Virus record (IMG/VR): IMGVR_UViG_3300036781_000418 | Span: 248,001 to 312,000 of that record | DNA length: 64,000 bases | Reading direction: 5' to 3' (one strand) | Shown: positions 29,862-58,110 of the stretch, in pieces | Position numbering within the stretch: the stretch's first letter is position 1 | Layout of the letters: the number at the start of each line of letters is the position of its first letter | Notes under the pieces: model-generated | Database searches by the model: none | What the model saw: the letters and a program-made list of their open reading frames with translations, nothing else | What the model was told of the DNA's origin: nothing | Program-made: the position numbers and the translations under genes

Positions 29862-30080
29862 ATGCGCTCTTTCGCCGCCTTCCTTCCCTGCTGGTTCCTC
29901 TTCCTCCTTGGCACGATTCCCGGCCTACTTGCGGATCACTGTAGATCCGACTACTGGAGTGACTTTTGGTTCAACATCTTCAACGACTGCATGCTCGGGT
30001 CTGTGAGCTGGCAGGCCTGGACGGAGATCACCGACAGCCAGTTCTGGCCATGGGAGCTCTTTGAAGATAAGGACGGCTAG
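29862..30080 (+). CDS. Small hypothetical membrane/secreted protein
   Basis: GGAG RBS; hydrophobic N-terminus. Confidence 0.55.
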   Translation: MRSFAAFLPCWFLFLLGTIPGLLADHCRSDYWSDFWFNIFNDCMLGSVSWQAWTEITDSQFWPWELFEDKDG

Positions 30081-30215
30081 GCGACACGAGGCGACGCCGG
30101 CTGCATTCAACCGATTCAGGCACAGAGCACAACACCCGAGGGACCAGCTGGTCCCTCGGGTCGTTTCGTGTCGCCGTCAACTGAACCCGCACTATCTGCC
30201 AGCTAATGCCTCTAC
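30080..30215 (-). repeat. 136-bp palindromic intergenic element, copy A
   Basis: Reverse complement aligns gap-free to 57975..58110 (106/136 identical by hand count). Confidence 0.85.
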
Positions 30216-30229
30216 GAGCGAGCGCTGTG

Positions 30230-33076
30230 TCACTTCGCCTCAAGGACCGCGACGCGAGCGCGCAGCTCCTGAACTTCCTTGACGAGCAACGGAACGAGCT
30301 TTGAGAAGTCAACACCCCATGCGTCCGTCTGTGCATCGTCGCCACCGACCTTGACGGCGTCTGGAACAACCTCGAACAGCTCTTGTGCGATGAAGCCAAG
30401 TTGAACATGTGTCGGGTCCGTCTTGAAGTTGAACGACCGAACTTGGATGGCGTCGATGGCGGTGGACTGGCTTACGGCAGGAACGATGTTCTCCTTCAAC
30501 CGCTGGTCCGAGGATACGTTGTACAGCACGCCCGTGGTGCCGTTCTGGGTGACACCGCCGATCAAGCCGCCGTTGTAGTAGTACGACGTGTAGCTTGAAC
30601 CAGTGGAGGTGCCAGACGTGTGGCCAGTGTAGATGTTCGCAGCACCGGCTCCGGTGATCACGTTCCCGCCGACGTTAGTTGCGATCTGCGATGTGTCAGT
30701 GTACCCAACCAACAGATTACCTGAACCGTCAAGAGTCATCGACTGCGTGAAGGTAATCGCGGTTCCTGCAGTTGGAGTACCGACCGATGAGTACCATTGA
30801 TGGTTCCCTGTGCTTGGTGAGAACTCGTTCAGCCCAGCTTTTGCGGTGAAGCGTGCAATCCAGTTCGCGCCGTTGAAATAGCTGTTGTAGGCGGTGCCAA
30901 CGTTCGTAGTACCTGAGTCATAGTGTGCCAAGTACGAGCCGAACTGCATGGCTTTCATGGTGCCCCATGCATCTGGAATGACGTTCAAGCCAAGAATACC
31001 GTTCGCATCCAACGCCATGGAGGATGTCAAGGTCGCCGCATTCCCGGCGGTGCCTGCTGGGGCCGACTGCCATTGGAACGAACCATTTGACACCGTGAAG
31101 GCAGCGCCACCGGTGGAACCAGCATACGTGTACTGTGATCCAGTGTAGAATAGGTTCTCAATCAAGCGAATTGAATCTCCACGGGCCCAGAGTGAACCAG
31201 TAGTTCCACTCGTACCGCCAGCACCCGCCGAAGAAAGTTGGATGACCTTTGCCCCTGACTCCCAAGCGCTCGGCGTAACGCCCTGTCCTACGTTGCCGTT
31301 GTTATCAAGGCGAACGCGCTCGGTACCAGTTGGTCCACCAGTGTATAGAGAAAGGAATGCACCTGCACCGATAGACACGCGAGATTCGGTGGTTGAGCGC
31401 AGGTACAAACCAGTCAGGTTTGCTGGGGTGCTGGTGTCACCGATCACCACCGGCGCGGACGCAGCTCCGGCATGAGACACCAACAGGCCGCTAGCACCGG
31501 TGATGAAGCCAGTTGCCGAAGCACCGATACCAAGTGCCCCACTTAGCAGGCTCTGGTTTGTACCTGACTGGTTGATGAAGTAGTTGCCAGTGAACGCAAG
31601 GTTGTCGGCGATGGTGGCGTTGTTCGTGCCAACCGTCTGATCAAGCGCATACAGCCCGATCGCACGGGTGATCGTCGAGCCCGCGCCCTTGATGATCGCC
31701 TGTGATGCGTATCCAGCAACGTACGGCACCGTGAACGCGGAGGCCGCGGTAGCTGGAACTGAGTTTACGCCGATGGCGGCGACCGTCGCCGTGGCGGTGA
31801 TCGCCAACGCTGAGTTCACGCCAGTCTGTGACGTACTAGCCAACGGACCAGAGGTGCCAACCGTCAGGGCCGCGGACGAAACGTACGAGCTGGCGCCGAG
31901 CCCGGTTGGCTTGCTGGTGTTCAAGCCGTTTCCATCGTACGTGAACGAGCCAGACGATGTCAGCGCCTTTGAACCACCAGTGTACATCACGCAGTTCGCC
32001 GATAGGTTCGACATCGTAAGGTTGCCGGCCAAGGTGATGCTGCCGCCGATGAACGACGCCACGTTACTCTGTTGGTTGATGAACCATGAGCCAGTAAAGT
32101 TGGTCGTGTCCGCGAGCGTGGCGTTGTTCGTGCCCGCCGTTTGGGTTGGTGCAAGGATACCAACGGTGTTCGTAATCGTCGAGCCTGCACCCTTGATGAT
32201 CGGCGCGCTGTTGAAGTTCGAGACATACGGTGCCGTAAACGTCGCGGCTGAAGTTGACGTTGCTGAGGAGACACCAACCACGGCGACCGTCGCGGCGGAC
32301 GTAGCCGTCAACGAAGTCAGCTGGCCAATTTGGGTCGTCGTCGACAGTGGGTTGGTGTTGGCGATGGAGACGGCTGAGTTGGCGGCCGTTGAACCGGCCA
32401 GACCCAACAAGCTGCCACTGGTGATCAGCTGACTGGTGCCCACCTGCAGTCCGTTGACTGGAAGGTTGAGCGTACCCGTCATGGTGTCACCGGTCTTCTG
32501 TACGAAGCCAGTACCCAGCGCACCCGTGATGTCGGAGCTTGTCACCGCGGTGGTACCGGTGACAAGGCCCTTGCCGTTGACCGTCACCTTCAAGAAGGAA
32601 CCGGTGCCGCTGTCCGTTTGGTTAGCAAGCGACGAGATGATGTTGACGTTCTGGGAACCGTCGAAGGTGGTCGAGCCGGTGACAGCGCCTGAGATGACGA
32701 TGTTCCGACCAGTCTCAAGCAAGGTCGCCTTGGAGGCGGTGCCGATGAAGTTGGAAGCCGTCACCGTGCCGGTTGAGCTGACGTTGCCGCCTGCGACGAC
32801 GAGCTGACCAACGCCGACGTTCAGACCGTTGGATGGCAGGTTCAAGGTGCCAGTCATGGTATCACCGGACTTCAACACGAACAAGCCGTCGGCGTCGGTG
32901 CTCAGTCGAGCCCAGTCACCGTTCAGGTAGCAGTACATGCCCTTGATTGACAGGTCCGAATCTGAACGGTAGAACAGCTCGCCTTCATCTGGATCCGATG
33001 GAAAGCTAGCACCGGACGCAATGGACGCGTTGGCGATCACCGATCCTTCTTGGATCTGTACACCGTGAAACTTCAT
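30230..33076 (-). CDS. Tail fibre with C-terminal S74 intramolecular chaperone
   Basis: SSDQRLKENI...LGFIAQEL; G/S/T-rich repeats; late promoter 33101-33106. Confidence 0.88.
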   Translation of the reverse strand: MKFHGVQIQEGSVIANASIASGASFPSDPDEGELFYRSDSDLSIKGMYCYLNGDWARLSTDADGLFVLKSGDTMTGTLNLPSNGLNVGVGQLVVAGGNVSSTGTVTASNFIGTASKATLLETGRNIVISGAVTGSTTFDGSQNVNIISSLANQTDSGTGSFLKVTVNGKGLVTGTTAVTSSDITGALGTGFVQKTGDTMTGTLNLPVNGLQVGTSQLITSGSLLGLAGSTAANSAVSIANTNPLSTTTQIGQLTSLTATSAATVAVVGVSSATSTSAATFTAPYVSNFNSAPIIKGAGSTITNTVGILAPTQTAGTNNATLADTTNFTGSWFINQQSNVASFIGGSITLAGNLTMSNLSANCVMYTGGSKALTSSGSFTYDGNGLNTSKPTGLGASSYVSSAALTVGTSGPLASTSQTGVNSALAITATATVAAIGVNSVPATAASAFTVPYVAGYASQAIIKGAGSTITRAIGLYALDQTVGTNNATIADNLAFTGNYFINQSGTNQSLLSGALGIGASATGFITGASGLLVSHAGAASAPVVIGDTSTPANLTGLYLRSTTESRVSIGAGAFLSLYTGGPTGTERVRLDNNGNVGQGVTPSAWESGAKVIQLSSAGAGGTSGTTGSLWARGDSIRLIENLFYTGSQYTYAGSTGGAAFTVSNGSFQWQSAPAGTAGNAATLTSSMALDANGILGLNVIPDAWGTMKAMQFGSYLAHYDSGTTNVGTAYNSYFNGANWIARFTAKAGLNEFSPSTGNHQWYSSVGTPTAGTAITFTQSMTLDGSGNLLVGYTDTSQIATNVGGNVITGAGAANIYTGHTSGTSTGSSYTSYYYNGGLIGGVTQNGTTGVLYNVSSDQRLKENIVPAVSQSTAIDAIQVRSFNFKTDPTHVQLGFIAQELFEVVPDAVKVGGDDAQTDAWGVDFSKLVPLLVKEVQELRARVAVLEAK

Positions 33077-33123
33077 CCCATATCTCCTTGTAGATATGGG
33101 TATTTAGGTCCTGGTGTCCCGGT

Positions 33124-33936
33124 TTACCGAACCATGAGCATGACCTGGTTCGTGCCGCCCATGTTCGAGTCAAGGCTGGAACCACCCTGCACGTAGACGT
33201 TTCCAGAGAGCGAGGCACCGTTGCAGAACGCACCTGGGTACCATGCTGGACTAGACACGTTACAGTACGTTGTGGTCATGCCAGTCGCGTTGATTCCGTA
33301 ACCACCGACGCTTGGGGTGCAGCAGTCGCGCATGAAGTAGTTGTCGTCAGCCGTCGCGGTAATTGGGAAGCCAAGGTTCGTCTGCATACCAGGAAAGATT
33401 GAACCACCACCGTAGACGCTGGTGTCCTGCTTAAGCACCGCCACGCCCGTGTACGTCTGGGTCGTGTCGCTGTTGAACAGCTGCCCGGCTCCACCAACGA
33501 AGCTGACCATGTAGATGTACGGACCCCAAGAGAAGTCGTCGTTCCGAGCTTGGTTGCCGTACATGTACTGGTAGAAGTTCAAGCCGTTCTGCCAGAGGCC
33601 GTAGATTCCAAGTTGGTAGCAGTTGTTCATGACCGCCAGGGAGCCGATCGCCGGCCCACGCCAGCCCCATGTTCCAGCGGTGGCTAGGGTCGCGCCTGGG
33701 TTGGTGCGAGCGACCAACATCCAACCACCGCCGTCCGTCGTCATGTCGCAGTAGACCTGCACCGCCGAGCCAGCGGGCGGCTTGATCCAGTAGGCACCAC
33801 TTCCAGATGTTGGAAACTGTCGCTTAATCTGCAGGGCTGACGCCCCGGCGTTTACGGCCGTTGAGCCGTCACGCGTTCCAGCTCCACCAACGGTGATGTA
33901 CCCCGCACCAAGGTGCATCGTCTGCTGCATCGTCAT
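33124..33936 (-). CDS. Fibrinogen C-terminal-like domain protein
   Basis: SGAYWIKP...VYCDMTTDGGGWMLV. Confidence 0.8.
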   Translation of the reverse strand: MTMQQTMHLGAGYITVGGAGTRDGSTAVNAGASALQIKRQFPTSGSGAYWIKPPAGSAVQVYCDMTTDGGGWMLVARTNPGATLATAGTWGWRGPAIGSLAVMNNCYQLGIYGLWQNGLNFYQYMYGNQARNDDFSWGPYIYMVSFVGGAGQLFNSDTTQTYTGVAVLKQDTSVYGGGSIFPGMQTNLGFPITATADDNYFMRDCCTPSVGGYGINATGMTTTYCNVSSPAWYPGAFCNGASLSGNVYVQGGSSLDSNMGGTNQVMLMVR

Positions 33937-36791
33937 GTCACGTTCCCGTTGATGACACAGGTAGCCGTGTCAATAAACCAAATGGTGGCAAACCCAAACG
34001 GTAGCAGCGTGCGGTTGCCCGTGGCGGTCGTCCCACCAAGGCGTAGTGTCACTCCAGCGTCTTGAATAAGGGTGACCGCCGAGTTGGAGTTGTTGAAGAC
34101 GGAGAACGTGGCCCCCGCGGTGCTTGTGCCTACTGTCTGACTGGTTGTAATCACCCAGCACGCACCACGTACAAACCCAGAGGCAACTGGTGGAATGTTA
34201 CGCCAACCAAGCTCTTGGGTGTTGGTCTGGTCGAAGATGCCGTTTTGATTGATCAACATCCGCTCAGTGTAGACCGCCGTCTGGGAGTTGTAGCTACCAA
34301 ACGAGATCGACGTAGGTGACGCACCAGCCGACCCAGCGAAGAGGTTCAACTGAAAGGAGGAGCCTGTACCCATGTCAACTCCGAAGCCGTGCTGCGCGTT
34401 GCCTGGGTTGTCGTACATAAGGGCGCGGACGCCAGTCGTAGTGCCAAGTGAAAGGGCCGCGCTTGGTGACTGCGTGCTGATGCCCAGCTTCGAGTTGACC
34501 GCCACGACTCCAGTGTTCAAAATCGTGATGGCACCGTTTGCCGGCTCCGTATTACCGTTGCCGCCAAGTTCAAGCGTGTTTCCAGGCTTGCCAGTGAACC
34601 AGTACGCCACACCTGAACCGGCGTTCGCCTGCAGAACCATGTTGGCGCTGACTGACGCGGCCCCACGCAGCTGCAGTGGAACGTTGTCAGTCGCCTGAAT
34701 CAACAGGTCGCCCGTCATCGTGTCACCAGTCTTCAACACGTTCAGTGAGGCTGCACCGACCACCGAGCCGACGAAGCCTGGGGCCGTGACGTTACCGGAG
34801 AAGGTGGCTGCCCCAGATGCTCGGTTGACGGCCAGCGCCGTGCTAAGCACGACACCGGTATCGGAGTAGCGAATCAGGCTGAAGTCTGAGCCAACGTTCA
34901 ACCCAGACTCAGCGGTGTTCGTCTTCTGAATCGTCCAACGGTTTGAGTTGGACGTCTGCAAGTTGACGCCGCCCGTCTGTGTCGCAGCCGAGGAGTTGAT
35001 GTTGATGACGGGGTTCGCCTTCGTCATCGTCATGTCGCCGCCCAGACCGATCAAGCCGGTGGCGCGTCCAATGGCGAACGGCGTATCAATCAAGACGCCG
35101 TTGTCGGCGTAGCGTGAGATCAAGAAGGTTGAACCAGCGTTGCCACCCGTCTCGGTGTCGTTGTTCTTACCCACCTGCCAACGCAGCAGACCAGTTGAAA
35201 AGTACTGGGTCAGCGACTGCTTGCCCGAAGCGGCGCTTAGCCGTAGGAACGCGTCCGTAGATGAGCCAATCAACATGTAGCTGCCTGACGACGTGATGTT
35301 CGCGCCAGCACGGTCAATTGACAGCGCGGTGTCAATGGCGACACCGTTGTCGGCGTACCGAGTGATGGTGAAGTTGGAGCCAGAGTTGGTGCCAGATTCG
35401 GTAAGGTTGTTCTTACCTACACCCCAACGCAGCGAACCGTTCGTCGACATCGACAGCATCGCGGGCTGTGCAACCGCGGCCGTGTTAAGGCTGATGGACG
35501 GAGTGGCCTTTGAGATCACCAGGTCACCCACCATGGTGTCGCCAATCTTCTTAACGTAGGCACTATCGGTGAAGGTGGTAATGTCACTTGATACCACAGG
35601 TGTCGTCCCTGAAACTCGACCGAACCCATCACGCGCAAACTTAAGGAACGTTCCACCTCCACCGTCCAACAGCGACGCTAGGCTGAAAACGTTGGAAATC
35701 AGGGTAAGGCCGGTGCCGGCTTGATAGGCGTTCTGCGCTGAGAACTGGACGAAGACCATAGGGTCCGTGCCGATCGTCGTGACCGTCGCCGTTTGGGTCC
35801 AGCCAGTATCGCCGTTCACGGTACCTTGCTGCACAAACACGGCGGCCGAGTTCACCTCATCGATTGGTGAGATGGAATCCATGTCGGTCGAACGAGTCCA
35901 CGCGCCTGAAGCCACGACGTAGATGCCGTTGTCAGGCTGGTTCGTTTGGTTCTTGACCAGCACTCGATCGCCGACGTTCGCCACAACGGAGTCAATGGAC
36001 TGCGAAGCCGACAGGGTGACGTTGCCGGTCGTCGCCAACTTTACTGGGTTCTTCCATGAGAAACCGGCGACGATGTTGTCGGCGTAGTCCTTCGTCACCA
36101 GGTGCAGGCCAGACGTCGGAGTCGCTCCAGTCACGGGGTTGTTGAACGTCCAGTTGCCGGTGATCGTCTCGTTGCCGGCGTTACGTGACAGCAGGGTGCC
36201 GTCCGTAACCTGTGACTCAAGGATCGTCAGCGCAGCCTGGTGCTGGGTAACTGAGCTCTGCGCGATACGACCATCGGCCAAGGTACCGGAAGTCACCTGG
36301 TTGCCGTCGATAGCGATTGCGGTGGTCGTCACCGACGTTGTCCGACCCTTCGCGTCGATCGTCATGACTGGAACGGCTGAGGCTGTACCGTAGGTTCCAG
36401 CCGTCGCGACCGTTACCAGGTTCAAGGTAGACGATGAGGAGCTCAACGTACCGGCCACGTCACCCGTCACATTGAAGGTTGACGACGTCGAGGTCCAAGC
36501 CGTGCCGGTGTAGAAGTACAAGACATCGGTCGAGGTATTGTAAAATAGGTCGCCACGCAACGCCGCCGTTGGAAAGCTGGCTCCAGATGGGGCGGTGATT
36601 GCGTCCGACGACGCGACTCGTTCCCATGCGGCCGAGATGTAGCAGTACAGTCCGCGCAGTGTGACGTCCGAGTCGGTACGGAAGAACATCTCACCTTCGT
36701 TTGGACTGGCTGGGAAGGATCCCGTTGCCGAGGCAACCACCAAGTTAACGATGGTGCCGCCCTCACGCAGGGTGATGGTGTGGTAAAGCAT
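33933..36791 (-). CDS. Fibre-like virion protein with three internal repeats
   Basis: GDRVLVKNQT..DNGIYV module; 3x RW.(V/I).K.N..E.G.N.GS.F...RY.D.G; late promoter 36814-36819. Confidence 0.85.
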   Translation of the reverse strand: MLYHTITLREGGTIVNLVVASATGSFPASPNEGEMFFRTDSDVTLRGLYCYISAAWERVASSDAITAPSGASFPTAALRGDLFYNTSTDVLYFYTGTAWTSTSSTFNVTGDVAGTLSSSSSTLNLVTVATAGTYGTASAVPVMTIDAKGRTTSVTTTAIAIDGNQVTSGTLADGRIAQSSVTQHQAALTILESQVTDGTLLSRNAGNETITGNWTFNNPVTGATPTSGLHLVTKDYADNIVAGFSWKNPVKLATTGNVTLSASQSIDSVVANVGDRVLVKNQTNQPDNGIYVVASGAWTRSTDMDSISPIDEVNSAAVFVQQGTVNGDTGWTQTATVTTIGTDPMVFVQFSAQNAYQAGTGLTLISNVFSLASLLDGGGGTFLKFARDGFGRVSGTTPVVSSDITTFTDSAYVKKIGDTMVGDLVISKATPSISLNTAAVAQPAMLSMSTNGSLRWGVGKNNLTESGTNSGSNFTITRYADNGVAIDTALSIDRAGANITSSGSYMLIGSSTDAFLRLSAASGKQSLTQYFSTGLLRWQVGKNNDTETGGNAGSTFLISRYADNGVLIDTPFAIGRATGLIGLGGDMTMTKANPVININSSAATQTGGVNLQTSNSNRWTIQKTNTAESGLNVGSDFSLIRYSDTGVVLSTALAVNRASGAATFSGNVTAPGFVGSVVGAASLNVLKTGDTMTGDLLIQATDNVPLQLRGAASVSANMVLQANAGSGVAYWFTGKPGNTLELGGNGNTEPANGAITILNTGVVAVNSKLGISTQSPSAALSLGTTTGVRALMYDNPGNAQHGFGVDMGTGSSFQLNLFAGSAGASPTSISFGSYNSQTAVYTERMLINQNGIFDQTNTQELGWRNIPPVASGFVRGACWVITTSQTVGTSTAGATFSVFNNSNSAVTLIQDAGVTLRLGGTTATGNRTLLPFGFATIWFIDTATCVINGNVT

Positions 36792-36878
36792 TAAGCGCTC
36801 CTTGTAGATCCCCTATTTAGGAAAAGCACACCGTTCGGCCGTCTCGTGTAAATATCAAATCACATCTTTTGGCTAACC

Positions 36879-49568: not shown

Positions 49569-49570
49569 GA

Positions 49571-51352: not shown

Positions 51353-51513
51353 GGCTGTAGGGTTAACAAGCTTACGTCCCCTATTTAGCCTCGAGCCAGA
51401 TCAAAGCTGAACCTGTTTCATGGTTAAGTGGATCCTAGATCTACAACGAACGATGGGTTCATGGCAACTTCGGCAAGTTAAGATGGGCCTACCACCACAA
51501 GTAGCGACGCACC

Positions 51514-51894
51514 ATGCGATCCATCTTCAAAAACCGCGGCTTCGACACGATCATCAGCGACGGCAACGACTACACCTGTCTCGCCTTCGTCACGAACGGT
51601 ACCGTCCTGCTCTACGGTATGGTCTCAACGTCCAGCGTCTCGGCGTACAACGACGCGAAGACGCAGGTGCTGAAGATCTTCGGTCGGCTCTACGCCACCG
51701 AAGAGCTGGTTCACCCCCACTTGGTAGTCTCCGGTATCGTGGTCGCCGGCAAAATCTCCGTAGGTCGTCTCGTAGTACGTAAGACGGCCTCACTCCAAGC
51801 AACGTCCATCGAATATGATGAACTTGTCATTGAGCCTGGTGCTTACCTCGACGTAGGAAAGCTCAGCAAGAAGGTCCCTCAACCCGTGGCTTAA
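51514..51894 (+). CDS. Bactofilin-like (polymer-forming) protein
   Basis: DTIIS..; LVVRKTA..YDELVIEPGA. Confidence 0.65.
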   Translation: MRSIFKNRGFDTIISDGNDYTCLAFVTNGTVLLYGMVSTSSVSAYNDAKTQVLKIFGRLYATEELVHPHLVVSGIVVAGKISVGRLVVRKTASLQATSIEYDELVIEPGAYLDVGKLSKKVPQPVA

Positions 51895-51918
51895 CCGCCT
51901 TTTCCACCACTAGGAGCT

Positions 51919-53889
51919 ATGATGTCTCTGAAAAAACTGGCTGAACAACGCAAGAACCAACTTGGGCAATCCGAGCCGATGACGCTCGAAGCCTACCTCG
52001 AACTGTGCAAGAGCGACCGCATGGCGTTCGCCACGGCGGCCGAGCGGTTCATGGACGCCGTTGGCGAGCCACGCATCGTTGATACTTCCGAAGACCAGCG
52101 CCTCTCGCGCATTCACTCCAACCAGAAGATCCGCGTCTACGACGCCTTCTCCGACTTCTACGGCATGGAAGCCGCGGTCGAACGCGTCGTCGCTTACTTC
52201 CGCCACGCGGCTCAAGGCCTCGAGGAATCGAAGCAGATCCTGTACTTGCTGGGTCCCGTCGGCGGCGGCAAGTCGAGCCTCTCCGAGCGCATCAAGGCGC
52301 TGATGGAGAAGCACGCTATGTACGTGCTGTACGACGAGAACGAGACCAACCCCGAGCTGAAGCTCTCGCCGGTCTTCGAATCGCCGCTGGCCCTCTTCAA
52401 CCCCAACAACCCCGACGACGCCGCCGTCCTGAACGAGTACGGCATTCCGCTGTCCTACGCAGGCCGCTCGCCGCTCTCCGGCTGGGCCCAACAGAAGCTC
52501 GACGAGTTCAAGGCCAACGACCTCGACTTCAGCGCCTTCAAGGTGGTCAAGCTGTACCCCAACAAGGACCGTCAGATCGGCATCATGAAGGTCGAGCCGG
52601 GCGACGAGAACAACCAAGACGTCTCGGTGCTGATCGGCAAGACTGACCTGCGCAAGCTCGAGAAGTTCCCGCAGAACCACCCGTACGCCTACTCCTACAG
52701 CGGCGGCCTGAACCGCACGACGCAAGGCCTGATGGAGTTCGCCGAAATGTTCAAGGCGAACATCAAGACCCTCAACCCCTTGCTGATGGCCACGCAGGAC
52801 CGCTCCTACAAGGGCACTGAAGCGATTCCCGCCCTCCCGTATGGTGGCGTGATCATGGCCCACTCCAACGAGTCCGAGTGGGAAACCTTCCGCAACAACA
52901 AGTCGAACGAGGCTTTCCTCGATCGCGTGTTCATCGTCAACGTGCCGTACTGCCTGCGCTACGACGAAGAGGAACGCATCTACCAGAAGATGCTGAACTC
53001 CTCGGTGCTGCGTGATGTGCGCGTCGCGCCTGGCACGCTGAAGATGCTGTCGCAGTGGTCGGTGCTGACGCGCCTGAAGAGCCCTGAAAACTCGACCATC
53101 GCGGCCAAGCTGGCGGTCTACAACGGCGAGAACGTCAAGGACAAGATGCCCAACGTCAAGTCCCACGAGGAGTACGTCGAGGCCGCTGGTCCGCGCGAAG
53201 GCATGGCCGGCATGTCCACCCGCTTCGCCTTCAAGGTGTTGAGCTCGGTGATCAACTTCCGCCCTGAAGAACTCCAGGCCAACCCCGTTGACCTGATGTT
53301 CGTGCTGACGGAAGCCTTGAAGAAGGAAGGTCTGCCGCCTGAAACCCAACAGGCCTACGAGAACTTCATCAAGGAGATCCTGCAACCGAAGTACTTCGAG
53401 ACCCTCGAGAAGGAACTCCGTGCGGCCTACCTCGACTCGTTCAGCGCCTTCGGCCAGAACCTCTTCGAGCGCTACATCCGCTTCGCCGAAGCGTGGATCG
53501 CCGACGAGCAGTGCAAGGACCCCGAGACCCACCAACTGCTGGACCGTCGGAAGCTCAACGACGAACTGGAAGCGATCGAGAAGGCCAGCGGCATCACGAA
53601 CGCGAAGGACTTCCGCCAGGACATCGTGAACTACGTCCTGCGCTACAAGTCGCGCAGCGAAGGCAAGTCGCCGGCGTGGACCGAGTACGAGAAGATCCGC
53701 CAAGTCCTCGAGAAGCGCATGTTCAGCGCCACTGAGAACATCATGCCCGTGATCTCGTTCGGCCCCAAGCACGACCGCGACCTCGAGGACAAGCACAACG
53801 CGTTCATCCAGCGCATGCTGGACAAGGGCTACTCCGAGCTGCAGATCAAGCAGCTGGTGGCCTGGTGGTCGAACAACAAGCGCACCTAA
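51919..53889 (+). CDS. prkA: PrkA/YeaG AAA+ ATPase/serine kinase
   Basis: KQILYLLGPVGGGKSS; EFAEMFKA; AFLDR. Confidence 0.93.
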   Translation: MMSLKKLAEQRKNQLGQSEPMTLEAYLELCKSDRMAFATAAERFMDAVGEPRIVDTSEDQRLSRIHSNQKIRVYDAFSDFYGMEAAVERVVAYFRHAAQGLEESKQILYLLGPVGGGKSSLSERIKALMEKHAMYVLYDENETNPELKLSPVFESPLALFNPNNPDDAAVLNEYGIPLSYAGRSPLSGWAQQKLDEFKANDLDFSAFKVVKLYPNKDRQIGIMKVEPGDENNQDVSVLIGKTDLRKLEKFPQNHPYAYSYSGGLNRTTQGLMEFAEMFKANIKTLNPLLMATQDRSYKGTEAIPALPYGGVIMAHSNESEWETFRNNKSNEAFLDRVFIVNVPYCLRYDEEERIYQKMLNSSVLRDVRVAPGTLKMLSQWSVLTRLKSPENSTIAAKLAVYNGENVKDKMPNVKSHEEYVEAAGPREGMAGMSTRFAFKVLSSVINFRPEELQANPVDLMFVLTEALKKEGLPPETQQAYENFIKEILQPKYFETLEKELRAAYLDSFSAFGQNLFERYIRFAEAWIADEQCKDPETHQLLDRRKLNDELEAIEKASGITNAKDFRQDIVNYVLRYKSRSEGKSPAWTEYEKIRQVLEKRMFSATENIMPVISFGPKHDRDLEDKHNAFIQRMLDKGYSELQIKQLVAWWSNNKRT

Positions 53890-53973
53890 CCGTGCGTCGG
53901 TTGTAAGTAAGGTAAGGAGGGTGGCCGTGGTGGGCTACCCTCCATTACCCCTCCCCTTGAAAGGCGACCCATC

Positions 53974-55335
53974 ATGACAACGGACATTATGCACAAGTCA
54001 GACATGATCATCGTCGACCGCCGCCGCACGGCGCGCGGAAAGTCGCTCCCCAACCGAGAGCGACTGCTCGACCGGATCCGCGATGCAATTCGCTCGGCGG
54101 ATCCAGAAAACATCGGCACCGGCGGTGTCAAGGCTTCCGGTGCGCCGACTGGCGGCGCTGGTGGTGCCAACAACCCCGTCACCGTGGCCCGTGAGGCCTT
54201 GGCCGAACCAACCTTCCACTACGCCCGCCAATCAGGCAAGCACACCATCGTGCTGATTGGCAACAAGGAGTGGAACCGTGGTGACGACTTCCCGCTTGAA
54301 GGTGAAAGCGACGAAGAAGGTGGTGGCGGTGAAGGCGGCTTCGGTGAAGACGAAGAAGACGACTTCATCGTGAACATCTCGGCCGAGGAGTTCTACAAGG
54401 TCTTCTTCGACGACTGTGAGCTCCCCAACATCCAAGAGTCCACGATGCGCGTGGTGCCGGATGAAGCACCCTCGCACGCTGGCTTCCAGCGCAGCGGCAA
54501 CCCCGCCCAGCTGTCGGTCATCCGCTCCTACAAGAACTCCATGGGTCGCCGCAACGCGCTGACCAAGCCCGCTCGTGAGGAGCTGGCGGAACTGGAAGCC
54601 GAGTTCGAACTTCGTTCGCAGGGCAAGCACCCACAAGGTGAGTACCTCGACGAGGCGGAGAACATCTCGATCATGGCGACCTTGGCCGAACGGATCGAGG
54701 AACTGCGCCGCAAGATCGGCGCCACGCCGTTCTTCGAGGAGCTGGACCTTCGCTTCGTTCACCGTGAACGCCAGCAAGTCAAGAAGGCCGAGGCCGCGTT
54801 CTTCATGCTGATGGACGTGTCCGGTTCGATGGACGAGGAGCGCAAGCGGATCGCCCGCAAGATGTTCACGTTGCAGTACGTGTTCATCAAGCGCACGTAC
54901 CCCGACACGGACATCGTGTTCATCTCCCACACGAACACGCCGCTTGAGGTGACCGAGACGGACTTCTTCACGTCCACCCGCTCCGGTGGTACGTCCATCT
55001 CGCCAGCCTACACGATGGCGCATGACCTCATCAACAAGCGGTACGATCCGAACCTCACCAACATCTACCTGTCGCACGCCAGCGACAGCGACAACTGGGA
55101 CACGGACAACCTGCTGGTGGAGAAGGAGTTGGTGGGTAGTGGCCTGCTGCCGAAGCTGCGCCACATGGTCTACTTTCACTGCGGCTTTGGCTCCAACCAG
55201 TACGGTGCACGGGCCTTCATGGTGCTGCTCAAGGGCATCGCCAACAAGTCCAACAACAAGCTCACCGTGGCTTCGATCGAAGATGAAGGTGCCGTGTTCA
55301 CGGTGTTCAAGGCGGTCTACCGCAAGAAGGGTTAA
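53974..55335 (+). CDS. yeaH: YeaH/YhbH (DUF444) vWA-like protein
   Basis: IVDRR..GKSLPNRER; MDVSGSM; SGGTSIS; SDSDNW. Confidence 0.92.
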   Translation: MTTDIMHKSDMIIVDRRRTARGKSLPNRERLLDRIRDAIRSADPENIGTGGVKASGAPTGGAGGANNPVTVAREALAEPTFHYARQSGKHTIVLIGNKEWNRGDDFPLEGESDEEGGGGEGGFGEDEEDDFIVNISAEEFYKVFFDDCELPNIQESTMRVVPDEAPSHAGFQRSGNPAQLSVIRSYKNSMGRRNALTKPAREELAELEAEFELRSQGKHPQGEYLDEAENISIMATLAERIEELRRKIGATPFFEELDLRFVHRERQQVKKAEAAFFMLMDVSGSMDEERKRIARKMFTLQYVFIKRTYPDTDIVFISHTNTPLEVTETDFFTSTRSGGTSISPAYTMAHDLINKRYDPNLTNIYLSHASDSDNWDTDNLLVEKELVGSGLLPKLRHMVYFHCGFGSNQYGARAFMVLLKGIANKSNNKLTVASIEDEGAVFTVFKAVYRKKG

Positions 55336-55337
55336 CC

Positions 55338-56813
55338 ATGAAACCAATCGACTCCAAAGAGGACTTCTCCGCTCCTCGCATCGTCGAGATCTGGAATGAA
55401 GTGGCGATCATCGCGAAGGATGAGCTGGGCATGGAGGTTGGCAAGAACCTCTACATCAACCAGTTTGAGATCGTGACGGCCGAACAGCTGCTGGACGCGT
55501 ACGCTTCGATTGGACTGCCCGTCAACTACCACCACTGGTCGTTCGGCAAGAAGTTCATCGAAAACGAGCGCTCGTACGCTCAAGGCAAGATGGGGCTGGC
55601 GCTGGAGATGGTGATCAACTCCAACCCCTGCATCAACTACCTGTCCGAGCAGAACACCATGGTCGAGCAGGCCATGGTGATCGCCCACGCCGCGATCGGT
55701 CACAACTTCTGCTTCACCAACAACGTCTACTTCAAGGAGTGGACGTCGGCCTCGAACATCGTGGACTACATGGTCTTTGCTCGTGACTTCATCGGTCGCT
55801 GTGAGGACCAGTACGGGCGCGACGAGGTGGAGAAGGTGATCGACGCGTGCCACTCCATCGGCACCCACTCGATCGACAAGTACCACCGTCGCAACACGAC
55901 CAAGGAGAACGAGGAAGCGCGCCTCGAGAAGATCCTCAAGGAAGACGACCGTCGCCAGCGTGAGCTGGACATCGTGATGCGCAAGACGTCGCTGAACTAC
56001 ATGAAGGACGATCCGGTCGCTGACACCGCCGAGGTGGACCAAGAGGAGAACATCCTCTACTTCATCATGAAGAAGGCGCCCAACACGCCGCAGTGGAAGC
56101 GCGAGATCATGCGCATCTGCTACAAGGTGGAGTCCTACTTCCAGCATCAAGGCCTGACCAAGGTATTGAACGAGGGCATCGCCACCTTCGTCCACTACTA
56201 CATCATGGAGCGGCTCGAGGCCAAGGGCTGCATCACGTCGGACGCGTACATCAAGTTCCTTGATCTGCACGCCTCGGTGATTCGTCAGCCACACTACAAG
56301 CAACGTGGCGGCACACGTTTCAACCCCTACAAGCTCGGCTTCGAGATCCTCATGGACCTCAAGCGCATCTGCACCGAGCCGACGGAGGAAGACAAGCGCT
56401 GGTTCCCCAACATCATCGGCCGCCCATGGTGCGAGGTGGTCAAGGAGGCCGTGACGGAGTACCGTGACGACTCCTTCATCCAGCAGTTCATGTCACCGAA
56501 GCTGATGCGCGACTTCGGGCTGTTCTCCATCGAGATCGACTACGAAGAGTCGGACGACTACGCCAAGGTGCTGGAGATCCAAGACGATCAAGGGTACTCC
56601 AACCTTCGCACGCAGCTCGCCCAAAGCTACGAGCGCATCAACTACGTGCCGGAAATTGCGGTGGTCAAGGCCGACCTCGGCGGCGACCGCACCCTGCACC
56701 TGCGCTACAAGCAGTTCAACGAGCGCACAGTGGACGTGGACGACGCACGTGACGTGATTCGCCACCTGAAGTTCCTCTGGGGCTACCCAGTCTCGTTTGA
56801 AATCCCTGATTGA
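55338..56813 (+). CDS. spoVR: SpoVR/YcgB family protein
   Basis: GLPVNYHHWSFGK; MVINSNPC; NEGIATF; FNPYKLG. Confidence 0.92.
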   Translation: MKPIDSKEDFSAPRIVEIWNEVAIIAKDELGMEVGKNLYINQFEIVTAEQLLDAYASIGLPVNYHHWSFGKKFIENERSYAQGKMGLALEMVINSNPCINYLSEQNTMVEQAMVIAHAAIGHNFCFTNNVYFKEWTSASNIVDYMVFARDFIGRCEDQYGRDEVEKVIDACHSIGTHSIDKYHRRNTTKENEEARLEKILKEDDRRQRELDIVMRKTSLNYMKDDPVADTAEVDQEENILYFIMKKAPNTPQWKREIMRICYKVESYFQHQGLTKVLNEGIATFVHYYIMERLEAKGCITSDAYIKFLDLHASVIRQPHYKQRGGTRFNPYKLGFEILMDLKRICTEPTEEDKRWFPNIIGRPWCEVVKEAVTEYRDDSFIQQFMSPKLMRDFGLFSIEIDYEESDDYAKVLEIQDDQGYSNLRTQLAQSYERINYVPEIAVVKADLGGDRTLHLRYKQFNERTVDVDDARDVIRHLKFLWGYPVSFEIPD

Positions 56814-56823
56814 AAGGACCACC

Positions 56824-57006
56824 ATGATCACCGCTGAACAAGAAACCAAGTTGCGCGCCTTGCTGAAGCGCAACCTCCTCGACGAGGAGCAGCTGGCCGA
56901 TGAGGAACCATGGGGGCAGGACGGCTCGATGAACTGCTTCGACAACGGGAAACCGTTTGGCGCCCACGACCTGGCTGAAGAGATCTTCGAGATCATCGGC
57001 CAGTAG
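56824..57006 (+). CDS. Small acidic protein
   Basis: AGGA RBS. Confidence 0.6.
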   Translation: MITAEQETKLRALLKRNLLDEEQLADEEPWGQDGSMNCFDNGKPFGAHDLAEEIFEIIGQ

Positions 57007-57090
57007 TTTTCAGCATTGTCGCACAAGGGACCTTTGGGTCCCTTTCCGGTCTCCGGCTGTAAATACCAACACAGCTAGCTACAACCTGAC

Positions 57091-57978
57091 ATGCGGTCAT
57101 TCAAACAGTTTCTCCTCCAAGAAGGCGGTAAGGCCATGGAGGAACACGGCGTAGACCGTGCTACCAAGGCGGACATCGAGTCCGTACTTGATCAACTCGC
57201 CTCCGCGCTCTCCATGTCGAAGGACGACCTAGCCAAGCAGCTGCTTGGCTCGACGACCTTGACGCTGAAGGGCAAGAAGGAAGACTCAGGTGACGTCGAC
57301 GTCGGCCTGTTGAAGGACACCCGTGACGAGGCGGTCGCTGCCGTCGAGCAGCACGTTGGAGTTCAAGGCAAGAAGATCGGCGCCAACATCGTCTCGTTCC
57401 CATTTACGGTCGGTGACAAGAAAGTCCAAGTCGACCTGGTGTTCGTGCCTGACCTACGCTGGGCACGCTTCTCGCACTTCGCCTCGGCCAACTCACAACA
57501 CAAGTCCGGTGTTCGCAACGAACTGATCCACTCCGCCCTCAAGTTCTCCCACGTACCTGGTGAGGACGTCGTGCACGTGGACAAGGACGGCAACCTGGTG
57601 GTGCGTGCGTCACGTTCCTACAACCTTGAGGACGGTGTCAAGCGAATCTTCAAGGTCGCCCCGAAGCGCAAGGACGGCCAAGGTCGGGTGAAGTCCACGG
57701 TCCACACCACGCCCGAAGAAGTTCGTCGCACCCTTGACGACATCGGCGTCTCCACGAAGTTCTCCGACAAGGAGGACCTGATCCTTGACCCTAACCAGCT
57801 CGGTGAGCTTCTGTTCGGTCAAGGCGTCGGTGGGAACGACATGCTCTCCACTGAGCAGCTCATCAAGCTGATCAAGGACAAGAAGGGCGACCGTGCCGAG
57901 GCTATCCTCAAGGACGCGGTGCAGGGGATCAAGGCCCGTAAGTTCGACGTCCCCGACGAGCTCAAGCAGTACGAGTAG
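57091..57978 (+). CDS. Pol-beta-type nucleotidyltransferase-like late protein
   Basis: LLGST..SGDVDV..VQVDLVF; MRSFKQFLLQE N-terminus; TAAATA 57060. Confidence 0.7.
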   Translation: MRSFKQFLLQEGGKAMEEHGVDRATKADIESVLDQLASALSMSKDDLAKQLLGSTTLTLKGKKEDSGDVDVGLLKDTRDEAVAAVEQHVGVQGKKIGANIVSFPFTVGDKKVQVDLVFVPDLRWARFSHFASANSQHKSGVRNELIHSALKFSHVPGEDVVHVDKDGNLVVRASRSYNLEDGVKRIFKVAPKRKDGQGRVKSTVHTTPEEVRRTLDDIGVSTKFSDKEDLILDPNQLGELLFGQGVGGNDMLSTEQLIKLIKDKKGDRAEAILKDAVQGIKARKFDVPDELKQYE

Positions 57979-58110
57979 AGGCATTAGCTGACAGATAGTG
58001 CGGGTTCACCGTACGGCGACACGAAATGAACAGAGGGACCCTAGGGTCCCTCTTCTGTTGTGCTCTATGTCGAAGTTAGCCGGGATGAACCGGCGTCGCC
58101 TCGTGTCGCC
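57975..58110 (+). repeat. 136-bp palindromic intergenic element, copy B
   Basis: Gap-free alignment with reverse complement of 30080..30215. Confidence 0.85.

What the first reader, a model, noticed from the sequence alone, without database searches (positions are those of the whole stretch)
30080..58110. 136-bp palindromic element duplicated in inverted orientation 27.8 kb apart
Seen: 30080..30215 (minus) and 57975..58110 (plus) align without gaps at 106/136 by hand count. Homology starts exactly at GTAG. Internal 10-bp inverted repeats GGCGACACGA/TCGTGTCGCC flank a central fully palindromic core, GAGGGACC-CTAG-GGTCCCTC versus GAGGGACC-AGCT-GGTCCCTC; the loop changed but stayed self-complementary. 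Both copies lie between convergent genes, each next to the 3' end of an S74-chaperone fibre gene. Established: REP elements begin with GTAG. Inference: a REP/MITE-like mobile element, a recombination or cruciform site that could invert the intervening segment, or an elaborate bidirectional terminator RNA.
Basis: partly seen in the sequence, partly recalled or inferred. Interest (0 to 1): 0.75.

Follow-up and report, generated by a model that had tools for sequence, protein, structure and literature searches.

The report
Modular intergenic cassettes in jumbo phage
The two 136-bp "palindromic elements" are real, but they are just two of many intergenic cassettes in a 343-kb soil jumbo phage, each built from a shared two-way transcription terminator, a short box that follows stop codons, and an ultra-conserved ~27-base signal of unknown function that occurs about every 30 kb in this whole phage clade.

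Summary
In detail: window 30080-30215(-) and 57975-58110(+) align without gaps at 106/136. It is not a two-copy element. The window belongs to a circularly assembled 342.6-kb jumbo phage. That genome holds a third full 136-bp copy and a fourth copy lacking the first module.

The element is a composite of three parts:
- M1, a 34-48-nt motif with 11 copies in the genome.
- M2, a GGCGACACGA(GGCGACGCCGG) box with 23 intergenic copies. It mostly starts within 10 nt after a stop codon.
- A GC hairpin that scores as an intrinsic terminator on both strands.

At the orthologous junction a related phage has the identical hairpin but neither M1 nor M2.

The M1 core (TA[C/G]AGGCATTAG-N-TG-R-CA-R-ATAG-CG) is near-invariant in at least 8 related jumbo phages and two unrelated 34-kb phages. 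It is always intergenic, occurs in either orientation, and is spaced unusually regularly at about 30-40 kb.

I found no RAYT, TnpB, tyrosine or serine recombinase in the phage, and no inversion relative to its relatives. Termination is well supported. M1's function is unresolved; I favour a DNA-level recognition site.

The parts
30182..30229 (-). M1, copy A. It comprises a lineage-specific extension (CACAGCGCTCGCTC) plus the 34-nt GTAGAGGCATTAGCTGGCAGATAGTGCGGGTTCA. The universal core AGGCATTAGCTGGCAGATAG is at 30192-30211.
   Evidence: One of 11 genome copies with 0-1 mismatch in 34 nt (one further copy has 4).
30166..30175 (-).
30134..30161 (.). GC hairpin ACCCGAGGGACC-AGCT-GGTCCCTCGGGT, a terminator-like stem-loop, followed on the M1 strand by the TGTTGTGCTCTGTG box (30121-30134).
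   Evidence: 12 pairs, 9 GC, T-rich tail on the + strand.
30080..30100 (+). Full M2 box GGCGACACGAGGCGACGCCGG. Its first G is the last base of the TAG stop of the 72-aa ORF 29862-30080. This is the 3' arm of the inverted repeat.
   Evidence: distance -1 to the stop.
29862..30080 (+). 72-aa ORF with a weak coding score and no family hit. It ends exactly at the element.
30230..33076 (-). Tail fibre gene A (948 aa) with a C-terminal Peptidase_S74 chaperone domain. Its stop lies 14 nt upstream of the GTAG of copy A.
57975..58008 (+). M1, copy B (34 nt; universal core 57979-57998). The TAG within GTAG is the stop codon of the 295-aa gene.
58015..58024 (+). M2 head (GGCGACACGA) following M1 in copy B.
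58032..58053 (.). Bidirectional terminator hairpin AGAGGGACC-CTAG-GGTCCCTCT, followed by the TCTGTTGTGCTCTATG box (58054-58069).
   Evidence: (terminator-like on both strands). The identical hairpin is at the orthologous junction in G003, and 7 copies of its core occur in G002.
58090..58110 (-). Full M2 box belonging to fibre gene B. It starts 2 nt after that gene's stop codon.
57091..57978 (+). 295-aa gene with no family hit. It is the last gene after the PrkA-DUF444-SpoVR cluster and has orthologues in G002 and G003.
58113..60458 (-). Tail fibre gene B (781 aa) with a Peptidase_S74 chaperone domain.
21423..21460 (+). A further M2 head in the window (GGCGACACGA), running straight into a terminator hairpin (GGGAGGC-TGAG-GGCCTCCC plus a T-run). 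It lies 9 nt after a stop codon.
   Evidence: genome 269423.

Best explanation
Each 136-bp unit is a composite intergenic cassette at the meeting point of two gene ends, not a single palindromic mobile element. It has three separately recurring modules.

(1) A GC-rich hairpin with T-rich tails on both strands stops transcription from both sides. It is the ancestral part.

(2) M2, the box GGCGACACGA(GGCGACGCCGG), normally begins 0-10 nt after a stop codon on the gene's sense strand. Where two gene ends face each other, two M2 boxes face each other across the terminator. That arrangement creates the 10-bp inverted repeat and the long outer stem.

(3) M1 is an asymmetric signal with a universal core of about 27 nt, TA[C/G]AGGCATTAG-N-TG-R-CA-R-ATAG-CG. 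In this lineage it extends to 34-48 nt.

The two window copies are neighbours number 9 and 10 of 11 M1 sites. They look inverted only because the fibre gene lies on the M1 side in one copy and on the M2 side in the other.

Shown: the modular make-up, the copy numbers, the strictly intergenic position hugging stop codons, terminator-like folding, conservation across a clade of uncultivated jumbo phages, regular spacing of about 30-40 kb, mixed orientation, and gain or loss of M1 and M2 at a conserved terminator.

Inferred: the hairpin terminates transcription in vivo. I also infer that M1 is read on double-stranded DNA by a sequence-specific factor that co-evolves with it, and that it punctuates the genome at intervals. 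Candidate roles are a nicking, loading, origin or roadblock site. It does not appear to act as a promoter for, or an RNA part of, the flanking genes.
For: Modularity:
- The M1 core occurs 11 times, and M2 heads occur 23 times in intergenic DNA. Seven M2 heads follow M1, and 11 of the other 16 start within 10 nt of a co-oriented stop codon.
- M1 and M2 give the most repeated 11-mers of the genome apart from tRNA arms.
- There are three full 136-bp copies and one M1-less copy, all at convergent junctions. The three full copies align without gaps.

Terminator:
- Searches support the hairpin as a terminator.
- G003 has the identical AGAGGGACCCTAGGGTCCCTC at the orthologous 295-aa/fibre junction without M1 or M2. 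G002 has a similar hairpin with A and T runs.

M1 across the clade:
- G002 has 8-9 sites, G003 10-11, the G005 fragment 29 sites in 6 clusters, and G021 8.
- 64 viral and 71 metagenome stretches match the core pattern; in the metagenome set true M1 sites can be told from chance matches.
- The logo from 70 unique instances varies only at position 9, at positions 12 and 15 (A or G only), and at position 20.

Spacing: the coefficient of variation (CV) of the gaps is 0.28 in G000 and 0.25 in G003, against about 0.95-0.99 for random intergenic placement. None of 5000 simulations was as regular. G021 gives 0.27 (p=0.002).

Not a promoter of neighbouring genes:
- Orientation is mixed (5 co-oriented, 3 convergent and 3 antisense in G000) and is flipped at orthologous loci.
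- M1 contains no sigma-70-like hexamer pair.
- About a third of instances run straight into a terminator.
- The clade's real promoter-like motif, CTAAATA, is orientation-consistent. In G000, 36 of its 57 copies lie a median 26.5 nt upstream of a co-oriented start.

Co-evolving reader: position 9 and the flanks are lineage-specific in all copies of a genome.

Assembly: contigs of the source run break at M1, with lengths equal to the inter-M1 gaps and an even depth of about 30x.
Against: - There are no transcript, nick or protein-binding data. The phage is known only from one soil DNA run.
- No candidate M1-binding protein was found. ParB, sigma-70 region 2 and recombinase families are absent.
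- Two unrelated 34-kb phages that share almost no proteins with the jumbo phages also carry M1. This fits a host-encoded reader or an RNA role as well as it fits a phage-encoded protein.
- The variable positions change only by transitions (R, R, Y), which RNA pairing with wobble would also allow.
- M1 next to a terminator also resembles a 3'-UTR-derived small RNA.
- Regular spacing is shown in related genomes that share some sites by descent, so the genomes are not independent replicates. G002 alone is not significant (p=0.08).
- Gene calls come from my own crude caller.
Confidence: 0.55

Rival explanations
1. RNA-level element. M1 (and M2) act in transcripts. Co-oriented copies plus the terminator would form 3'-UTR-derived or independently transcribed small RNAs carrying a common 20-nt seed. 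Antisense-oriented copies in 5' UTRs or intercistronic spacers would be their perfectly complementary targets. Alternatively the boxes are processing or stability signals at mRNA 3' ends.
For: - M1 and M2 abut stop codons. 25 of 62 M1 instances have a co-oriented long ORF ending between -21 and +17 of the core start, and 11 of 16 free M2 boxes lie within 10 nt of a stop.
- About a third of M1 copies are followed at once by a strong hairpin, which is the layout of a seed plus terminator.
- Antisense copies lie 8-100 nt upstream of start codons, for example before the 2918-aa virion gene and the 607/615-aa structural gene.
- The variable core positions show transitions only.
- High within-genome identity is what mutual complementarity would select for.
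Against: - There is no Rfam match, even at E<5.
- The core has no conserved secondary structure.
- No promoter is evident for free-standing copies.
- An RNA role gives no reason for spacing of about 30 kb.
- No RNA data exist.
Confidence: 0.2
2. REP/REPIN- or MITE-like mobile DNA. The palindromic unit, or its M1 and M2 modules, spread by transposition. This could use a host-encoded RAYT or other enzyme, or recombination in the manner of the PeSL cassettes of T4-type phages.
For: - Many copies lie in intergenic DNA at gene 3' ends.
- The 96-bp part (two inverted M2 boxes about 75 nt apart) has a REPIN-like geometry.
- Orthologous junctions in G003 and G002 lack M1 and M2, so they are empty sites.
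- A 133-aa gene moves together with an M1 between genomes.
- Near-identical M1 occurs in unrelated small phages, one of which is present in the same sample.
- G005 has tandem amplifications.
Against: - PF01797 and PF07282 are absent from G000, and PF00589 is absent from G000, G001, G002, G003 and G005; controls were positive.
- The 136-bp unit has no terminal inverted repeats or target duplications.
- Several M1 loci are syntenic across genomes with only about 50% protein identity. Those copies are therefore old and under purifying selection, not recent insertions.
- Regular spacing is not expected of a transposon.
- The M1 patterns searched (the G000-type form and a G000/G005 generalisation, not the general core) are absent from 185,579 prokaryote species genomes.
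Confidence: 0.13
3. Promoter cassette (PeSL-like). M1 is a promoter for host RNA polymerase with a phage factor, and the downstream parts are leaders or attenuators.
For: - In G000 three to four copies, and the G001 copy, sit just after a terminator and upstream of co-oriented genes.
- The core contains a TTGACA-like hexamer (exact in G002: TTGACA).
- Intergenic repeats of other viruses have proved to be promoters, for example halovirus HF2 (PMC8707807, abstract listed) and PeSLs (PMC4122927).
Against: - No -10 element lies at the right distance; that region is unconserved.
- About 30% of copies point away from or against the neighbouring genes, and orientation flips at orthologous loci.
- Many copies are followed within 0-8 nt by a terminator.
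- In convergent copies the transcript would be about 50 nt long.
- The clade already has an orientation-consistent promoter-like motif, CTAAATA.
- No sigma-70 region 2 protein and no T7-type polymerase hit were found, although the control for the latter was silent.
Confidence: 0.08
4. Site-specific or homologous recombination site. It would invert the 27.8-kb segment between the two copies, for instance to switch fibre expression.
For: - The copies are in inverted orientation and flank a segment next to two fibre genes.
- In the small phage G007, M1 lies about 240 nt from a 223-aa tyrosine recombinase gene.
Against: - The jumbo phages have no tyrosine or serine recombinase.
- The repeats lie outside the fibre reading frames, so inversion would not change the proteins.
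- The longest identical runs are only 34 and 21 nt within 78% identity.
- Gene order between the copies is collinear with G003.
- The pair is just two of 11 sites in both orientations.
- The contig-level read test was uninformative because contigs break at M1.
Confidence: 0.03

Closest known systems
PeSL composite promoter-terminator cassettes of T4-type phages (Arbiol 2010, PMC2839356; Comeau 2014, PMC4122927)
   Same: Both are short, conserved, composite intergenic modules that include a terminator stem-loop. Both are repeated many times in large T4-related myovirus genomes, are shared between otherwise unrelated neighbouring sequences, and are proposed as points of modular exchange.
   Different: PeSLs are an early promoter plus a stem-loop. 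They cluster around small ORFs in hyperplastic regions and are co-oriented with genes. M1 has no recognisable promoter hexamers, lies in either orientation, is evenly spaced about every 30 kb, and keeps an invariant core of about 27 nt across genomes with only about 50% protein identity.
REP / BIME / REPIN elements with RAYT transposases
   Same: Both are intergenic, often lie between convergent genes just after stop codons, are imperfectly palindromic, exist in many copies, and form inverted doublets of about 100 bp that fold into long hairpins. The G000 version starts with GTAG.
   Different: No RAYT or Y1 transposase gene is present in the phage. The GTAG belongs to the non-palindromic M1, not to the palindrome arms, and is TAC or TAG in relatives. 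The searched M1 forms were not found in any of 185,579 prokaryote species genomes (the general core was not searched there). Many sites are old and syntenic.
Bidirectional intrinsic (Rho-independent) terminators at convergent gene pairs
   Same: The central GC hairpin has T-rich tails on both strands between two gene ends. It is conserved at the orthologous junction in a relative.
   Different: The terminator accounts for only about 25-40 of the 136 nt. It does not explain M1, M2 or their genome-wide pattern.
Conserved sequences at localized single-strand interruptions of phage genomes (T5; phiKMV-like and tf phages) - recalled from my own knowledge, not tested
   Same: Both are a handful of strongly conserved, asymmetric sites of about 10-20 nt scattered at intervals of tens of kb along a phage genome. 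Both are strand-specific, and their function is poorly understood.
   Different: No nick data exist here. T5 nicks lie on one strand only, whereas M1 occurs on both. The sequence resemblance is slight.
Integron attC sites
   Same: Both are imperfect palindromes of 60-140 bp that begin at or just after the stop codon of a gene.
   Different: No integron integrase is present (PF00589 absent), and there are no RYYYAAC/GTTRRRY core sites.

Membership tests
REP/REPIN (RAYT-associated) | A RAYT (Y1 HUH transposase, PF01797) encoded in the same genome. | tested here: not met
   no match in G000, while the control rang in 6 of 14 genomes. The host genome is unknown and could not be searched.
REP/REPIN (RAYT-associated) | A 20-40-nt imperfect palindrome headed by GT[AG]G, occurring as inverted doublets. 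| tested here: inconclusive
   Inverted M2 doublets of about 96 bp exist. However, the GTAG heads the non-palindromic M1 and is lineage-specific. M2 itself is preceded by TAC, not GTAG.
MITE | Terminal inverted repeats at both ends of the unit, plus target-site duplication. | tested here: not met
   The ends of the 136-bp unit (GTAGAGGCATT... and ...CGTGTCGCC) are not inverted repeats of each other. The flanks of copies A and B share no duplication.
MITE / mobile element in general | Presence/absence polymorphism (empty sites) at orthologous loci. | tested here: met
   the junctions in G003 and G002 orthologous to copy B carry the terminator hairpin only. Against this, other M1 loci are syntenic in three genomes.
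IS200/IS605-TnpB (omega-RNA) ends | A TnpB/Cas12f-like or TnpA gene in the genome. | tested here: not met
   none found, with positive controls.
Invertible DNA segment (Gin/Cin/Hin, Rci shufflon, Fim-type) | A serine or tyrosine site-specific recombinase encoded nearby or in the genome. | tested here: not met
   PF00589 is absent from G000, G001, G002, G003 and G005. PF00239 is absent from G000.
Invertible DNA segment | Both orientations of the segment observed. | tested here: inconclusive
   Only assembler contigs are available and they break at M1. The segment is collinear between G000 and G003.
Intrinsic bidirectional terminator | A GC-rich stem-loop followed by a T-rich tract on both strands, located between gene 3' ends. 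| tested here: met
   Searches (copy B, both strands; copy A, + strand), and fold z-scores of -3.0 to -3.7. Actual 3' ends could not be tested.
PeSL (promoter-early stem-loop) | A sigma-70-type early promoter joined to the stem-loop and co-oriented with downstream ORFs. | tested here: not met
   No promoter-like hexamer pair in M1. Orientation is mixed.
Known RNA families (Rfam 15) | A match to a covariance model. | tested here: not met
   (gathering threshold: tRNAs only). (E<5: two chance-level hits unrelated to the element).

The most novel reading that the evidence does not exclude
M1 is a genome-punctuation signal of a clade of uncultivated soil jumbo phages. It would be an asymmetric DNA site of about 27 bp, kept at one per about 30-40 kb despite turnover of individual sites. 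A co-evolving factor would read it to nick, load a machine on, initiate at, or insulate successive domains of a 340-kb genome. Small unrelated phages of the same community would have borrowed the site, each carrying one copy in a genome of about 34 kb. Nothing I could find in the literature library describes such a regularly spaced, sequence-defined site system in a phage.
Probability: 0.35. Interest if true: 0.85.

Novelty: new variant of a known kind. Interest (0 to 1): 0.62.

Why it matters
How genomes of 300 kb and more are organised in jumbo phages is largely unknown. This case shows a sequence-defined signal under extreme purifying selection: only 3-4 variable positions in about 27 nt, across phages whose proteins are only about 50% identical and whose GC content ranges from 45 to 57%. 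The signal is laid out far more evenly than chance would give.

If it marks nicks, origins, loading sites or insulators, it would give a handle on replication, transcription or packaging logic in a whole uncultivated clade. Its presence in small co-occurring phages hints at cross-talk between phages.

Practically, M1 is a compact marker for finding fragments of this clade in metagenomes. It also explains why short-k-mer assemblies of these phages break into pieces of 20-45 kb.

For the original finding the message is more modest. The 'palindromic element' is mostly an ordinary shared terminator dressed with two repeat modules. It is not an inversion switch for fibre genes.

Tried and rejected
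- **Known RNA:** Rfam at gathering and at E<5 gave nothing.
- **tRNA-like reading of M1 (GCGGGTTCA):** ARAGORN found no tRNA at any M1 locus or in the G005 arrays.
- **Small peptide genes in the G005 array:** an in-frame reading exists, but the array holds expansions of a 13-nt unit, which rules out coding.
- **Promoters:** sigma-70, sigma-54, extended -10 and MotA-type readings of M1 on either strand all fail on spacing or conservation (inspection; scans).
- **T7-type polymerase:** no PF00940 hit, but the control was silent, so this is weak. The paper on the nearest named relative, RsoM2USA, reports no phage RNA polymerase (PMC8504454).
- **Host origin:** the G000-type M1 and a G000/G005 generalisation of it were absent from 185,579 species genomes.
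- **Named phages:** there was no DNA match of the element in 50,697 phage records, and no M1 in RsoM2USA at up to 2 mismatches.
- **Replication origin with an AT-rich unwinding region:** the flanks of M1 are not AT-rich.
- **Rearrangement breakpoints:** synteny breaks between G000, G003 and G002 do not systematically fall at M1.
- **Association with a gene type:** M1 neighbours are diverse (RNA ligase, Acb1-like, adaptor, baseplate hub), with no nuclease association.
- **dif/Xer, ops/RfaH, boxA and T7 class II terminator resemblances:** these came from memory and were too weak to pursue.
- **Inversion test by reads:** only contigs were available and they break at M1.

Full report
**1. The observation**

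The two stretches exist as described. Window 30080-30215 read on the minus strand and 57975-58110 on the plus strand align without a gap at 106 of 136 positions. Both start with GTAG. Both have GGCGACACGA and TCGTGTCGCC around a perfect hairpin, GAGGGACC-AGCT-GGTCCCTC or GAGGGACC-CTAG-GGTCCCTC. A 34-nt pattern from the 5' end hits exactly these two places in the window and none in 100 shuffles. Both flanking 'fibre' genes (30230-33076 - and 58113-60458 -) carry a Peptidase_S74 chaperone domain and match tail-fibre PHROGs.

**2. The setting**

The window is bases 248001-312000 of a 342,591-bp virus record. Its 'direct terminal repeat' is exactly 127 bp, which is an assembler overlap, so the record is a circular assembly. 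GC content is 57%, and the window holds a cluster of 17-18 tRNA genes. The only sequencing run that holds the window is a soil metagenome, DNA only. The closest named phage by a PrkA-like protein is Ralstonia phage RsoM2USA (343.8 kb, 49.7% identity). Its authors place it with XacN1, distant from Rak2-like phages, and report no phage RNA polymerase (PMC8504454).

**3. It is not a two-copy element**

A search of the whole genome with copy B gave 21 matches. Pattern searches resolve two independent modules.

- **M1** is GTAGAGGCATTAGCTGRCAGATAGTGCGGGTTCA, usually preceded by ...CACAGCGCTCGCTC. It occurs 11 times, at genome positions 9014+, 50500+, 75499+, 101950-, 123725-, 158807+, 202553+, 234623-, 278215-, 305975+ and 323711-. 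Ten copies have 0-1 mismatch in the 34 nt; one has 4.
- **M2** is (T)ACGGCGACACGAGGCGACGCCGG. Its head GGCGACACG[A/G] occurs 23 times in intergenic DNA. Seven of these follow M1 after a 6-nt spacer. Of the other 16, 13 have a co-oriented ORF stop within 80 nt and 11 within 10 nt. In three the stop codon's G is the first G of the box.

M1 and M2 supply the most repeated 11-mers of the genome apart from tRNA T-arms. There is a third complete 136-bp copy at genome 123590-123725, which is 106/136 and 105/136 identical to copies A and B, again without gaps. A fourth copy at 10675-10770 lacks M1. All four sit where two gene ends meet.

**4. Anatomy of the 136 bp**

Read on the M1 strand, the unit consists of:

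- M1 (positions 1-34);
- a 6-nt variable spacer;
- the M2 head (41-50);
- a hairpin (about 56-81);
- a TGTTGTGCTCTRTG box (82-95);
- a poorly conserved spacer of about 20 nt with conserved length;
- the reverse complement of a full M2 (116-136), which belongs to the gene arriving from the other side.

The hairpin passes the terminator scan on both strands in copy B and on the plus strand in copy A, and no sigma-70-like site lies in either element. Folding gives the outer M2 stem enclosing the hairpin, with z-scores of -3.0 to -3.7 on either strand.

**5. Relatives**

Exact-pattern scans of IMG/VR found homologous motifs in other large contigs. I fetched three whole records: G002 (336 kb, GC 45%), G003 (332 kb, GC 54%) and G005 (a 161-kb fragment, GC 48%). 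They share 108-201 proteins with the window's genome at 48-59% identity.

In each of them an M1 variant is among the most repeated words:

- G002: AGGCATTAGTTGACA...
- G003: AGGCATTAGGTG...
- G005: AGAGCGCATTAGCCGAC...

Seventy unique instances give the core WWTA[C/G]-AGGCATTAG-N-TG-R-CA-R-ATAG-[C/T]G, with a weak GC-rich stretch upstream. Position 9 is lineage-specific (C here, T in G002, G in G003). Positions 12 and 15 are only ever A or G.

A scan of metagenome contigs found 71 more stretches. True M1 sites have the flanks and R at positions 12 and 15. They can be told apart from chance hits, which lack the flanks and have pyrimidines at those positions. Most short contigs that carry M1 are fragments (6-16% complete) of jumbo phages. 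RsoM2USA has none. No paper in the library contains the 12-mers of the motif.

**6. Where M1 sits**

M1 is always intergenic. Of 62 unique instances, 25 have a co-oriented long open frame ending between -21 and +17 of the core start. M1 itself supplies stop codons: TAG at -3, TGA at +10 when position 12 is A, and TAG at +17. Another 38 have a convergent long frame ending 23-157 nt from the core start, on M1's 3' side, six of them exactly at +23. About a third are followed at once by a strong GC hairpin. Nine of 67 have the motif CTAAATA 54-68 nt downstream.

CTAAATA behaves like the clade's true promoter, resembling the T4 late type. In G000 it has 57 copies, 44 of them intergenic, and 36 have a co-oriented start codon a median of 26.5 nt downstream.

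M1 does not behave like that. In G000, five copies are co-oriented with both neighbours, three lie at convergent junctions and three are antisense between same-strand genes. G003 and G002 show the same mix. At orthologous intergenic regions the orientation can be the same (G000 158811, G002 111515, G003 62403) or flipped (G000 202557 versus G003 112337; G000 123702 versus G002 174789).

**7. Spacing**

Gaps between successive M1 sites are 17.7-43.7 kb in G000 and 16.6-38.3 kb in G003. The coefficient of variation (CV) is 0.28 and 0.25 respectively, against about 0.95-0.99 for random placement in intergenic DNA. None of 5000 simulations was as regular. G021 (311 kb) has gaps of 29-65 kb, with CV 0.27 and p=0.002. 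G002 has CV 0.60 and p=0.08 because of one 98-kb gap. In the G005 fragment the 29 copies form six clusters 14-42 kb apart. One cluster is a 2-kb non-coding array upstream of the giant virion gene, at the place where G000 has a single M1. These genomes are related and share some sites, so they are not independent tests. Sites do turn over, however (paragraph 8), while the spacing stays.

**8. Gain and loss**

At the junction orthologous to copy B, between the 295-aa gene and the fibre gene, G003 has ...AAAAGAGGGACCCTAGGGTCCCTCGGCTGTTTC... This is the same hairpin with neither M1 nor M2. G002 has GAGGACC-AGT-GGTCCTC with A and T runs. The terminator is therefore ancestral, and M1 plus M2 were added in the G000 lineage or lost in the others. 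Conversely, where G002 and G003 have an M1 after the orthologue of G000 244867-245784, G000 has an M2. A 133-aa gene of unknown function stays next to an M1 in three genomes although its genomic neighbourhood differs.

**9. Small phages**

A complete 33,965-bp phage (G001, circular assembly) carries one M1 of the G000 type, including the lineage-specific flanks. It lies after a terminator at a convergent junction next to spanin-like genes. Apart from those 60 nt it shares with the jumbo phages only fibre-domain and lysis-gene similarity. A 34-kb 'provirus' (G007) carries one M1 of the G003 type, about 240 nt from a 223-aa tyrosine recombinase gene. Only 1 of its 39 ORFs matches the jumbo set. 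A contig continuing from M1 into G001-like sequence is present in the same soil run as the window's phage.

**10.

- **REP/MITE.** There is no Y1/RAYT transposase and no TnpB in the phage. The unit has no terminal inverted repeats and no target duplication. GTAG is lineage-specific.
- **Inversion.** There is no tyrosine or serine recombinase. Gene order between the two copies is collinear with G003: blocks 284879-292309 and 293610-319180 have the same orientation, and fibre A has moved but is not inverted.
- **Read evidence.** The read test could use only assembler contigs. These break at M1, and their lengths (27,804, 17,728, 41,016 and 21,800 bp) equal the inter-M1 gaps, at an even depth of about 30x. 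This confirms the repeat family but says nothing on inversion.

**11. What it most likely is**

The part I consider well supported is this. The 136-bp unit is a cassette at convergent gene ends, made of a shared bidirectional intrinsic terminator, two facing post-stop-codon boxes (M2) and one M1.

M1's role is open. Three points argue against a promoter for, or an RNA part of, the neighbouring genes: mixed and flipped orientation, immediate terminators, and the contrast with CTAAATA. Three points favour a DNA site read by a sequence-specific factor:

- near base-by-base invariance of an asymmetric 27 nt;
- lineage-specific changes shared by all copies of a genome, as with polymerase-promoter or protein-site co-evolution;
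- tandem amplification in G005, together with the even spacing.

ParB and sigma-70 region 2 proteins are absent, and M1's neighbours are functionally diverse.

An RNA role remains a serious rival. This could be a 3'-UTR-derived small RNA with a common seed whose targets are the antisense copies in 5' leaders. M1 hugs stop codons and terminators, and its variable positions change only by transitions.

**12. Comparison with known systems**

The nearest described things are the PeSL promoter-terminator cassettes of T4-type phages (PMC2839356, PMC4122927) and the REP/REPIN elements of bacteria. The cassette shares with PeSLs its modular, repeated, terminator-containing character in T4-related phages. 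It shares with REPINs its geometry and its position after genes. It fails the defining features of both: a promoter for PeSLs, and a RAYT plus a GTAG-headed palindrome for REPINs. I know of no precedent for the even spacing and clade-wide invariance of M1. Site-specific nick consensus sequences of T5 and phiKMV-like phages are a loose functional analogy recalled from memory, not tested here.

**13. Verdict**

The terminator reading is supported. The mobile-element and inversion readings are not, apart from real gain and loss of modules.

Noticed in passing
window 51919-56813 (+): A complete PrkA (AAA_PrkA plus PrkA C-terminal), DUF444 (YeaH-like) and SpoVR gene trio is encoded by the phage. 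These are normally a bacterial stress or sporulation-linked operon. PrkA homologues also occur in RsoM2USA, in several 600-kb uncultured phages and in Thermus phages.
   Followed up: partly
window 5642-11459 (+): A cluster of 17 (ARAGORN) to 18 (Rfam) tRNA genes, including duplicates (Phe x2, Ile x2, Asn x2, Gln x2, Lys x2, Thr x2). One 92-nt tRNA-Asn call is unusually long.
   Followed up: no
G000 genome-wide; e.g. L007 about 1630 (genome 158936) and genome 101790: CTAAATA is a strongly intergenic, orientation-consistent motif a median of about 26 nt upstream of start codons (36 of 57 copies in G000, with similar figures in G002 and G003). It is probably the clade's T4-late-like promoter. TATAAATA itself is absent.
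   Followed up: partly
L007:1021-1449 (+) (genome 158327-158755): A 142-aa protein matches Pfam Acb1 (anti-CBASS phosphodiesterase) at E=5e-20. It lies directly upstream of an M1 site that is syntenic in three genomes.
   Followed up: no
L042 1000-3200 (-) (G005 about 22.8-24.5 kb): A 2-kb non-coding array in a related jumbo phage fragment. It holds 10 M1-like copies 100-230 nt apart, long M2-armed palindromes, and a 13-nt unit (AATGGATTCTTCC) expanded six-fold. It lies just upstream of the giant (about 2900-aa) virion protein gene.
   Followed up: partly
L155:16324-16343 (+) (G001) and loose end at window 58010: A complete 34-kb phage, unrelated in gene content, carries one M1 with the G000-specific flanks. 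G001-like sequence is present in the same soil run as the jumbo phage. Its 893-aa fibre shares domains of about 100 aa with many fibres of the jumbo phages.
   Followed up: partly
L158:9940-9959 (-) and L158:10203-10874 (+) (G007): In a 34-kb 'provirus' the single M1 lies between a weak GIY-YIG-like ORF and a short (223-aa) Phage_integrase-family recombinase gene.
   Followed up: partly
window 30230-33076 and 58113-60458, versus G003 205934-210695: In relative G003 the orthologues of the two S74 fibre genes directly flank the 295-aa gene. In the window's phage, fibre A has been moved about 24 kb away without inversion and now sits next to an M1 cassette.
   Followed up: partly
G000 85.4-133 kb versus G002 and G003: A block of about 20 kb (genome 85386-105697, virion genes) is inverted and transposed relative to both relatives. 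One junction (82.7-85.4 kb) contains an M2 box at 83894.
   Followed up: no
window 29135-29770 (-): A 211-aa RNase_T/DnaQ-like 3'-5' exonuclease gene lies just beyond copy A.
   Followed up: no
L162:1111-2268 (+) (genome 9111-10268): A T4 RnlA-type RNA ligase (the PHROG annotation is 'RNA ligase and tail fiber attachment catalyst') lies immediately downstream of the first M1 site. The arrangement is approximately syntenic in G002 and G003.
   Followed up: no
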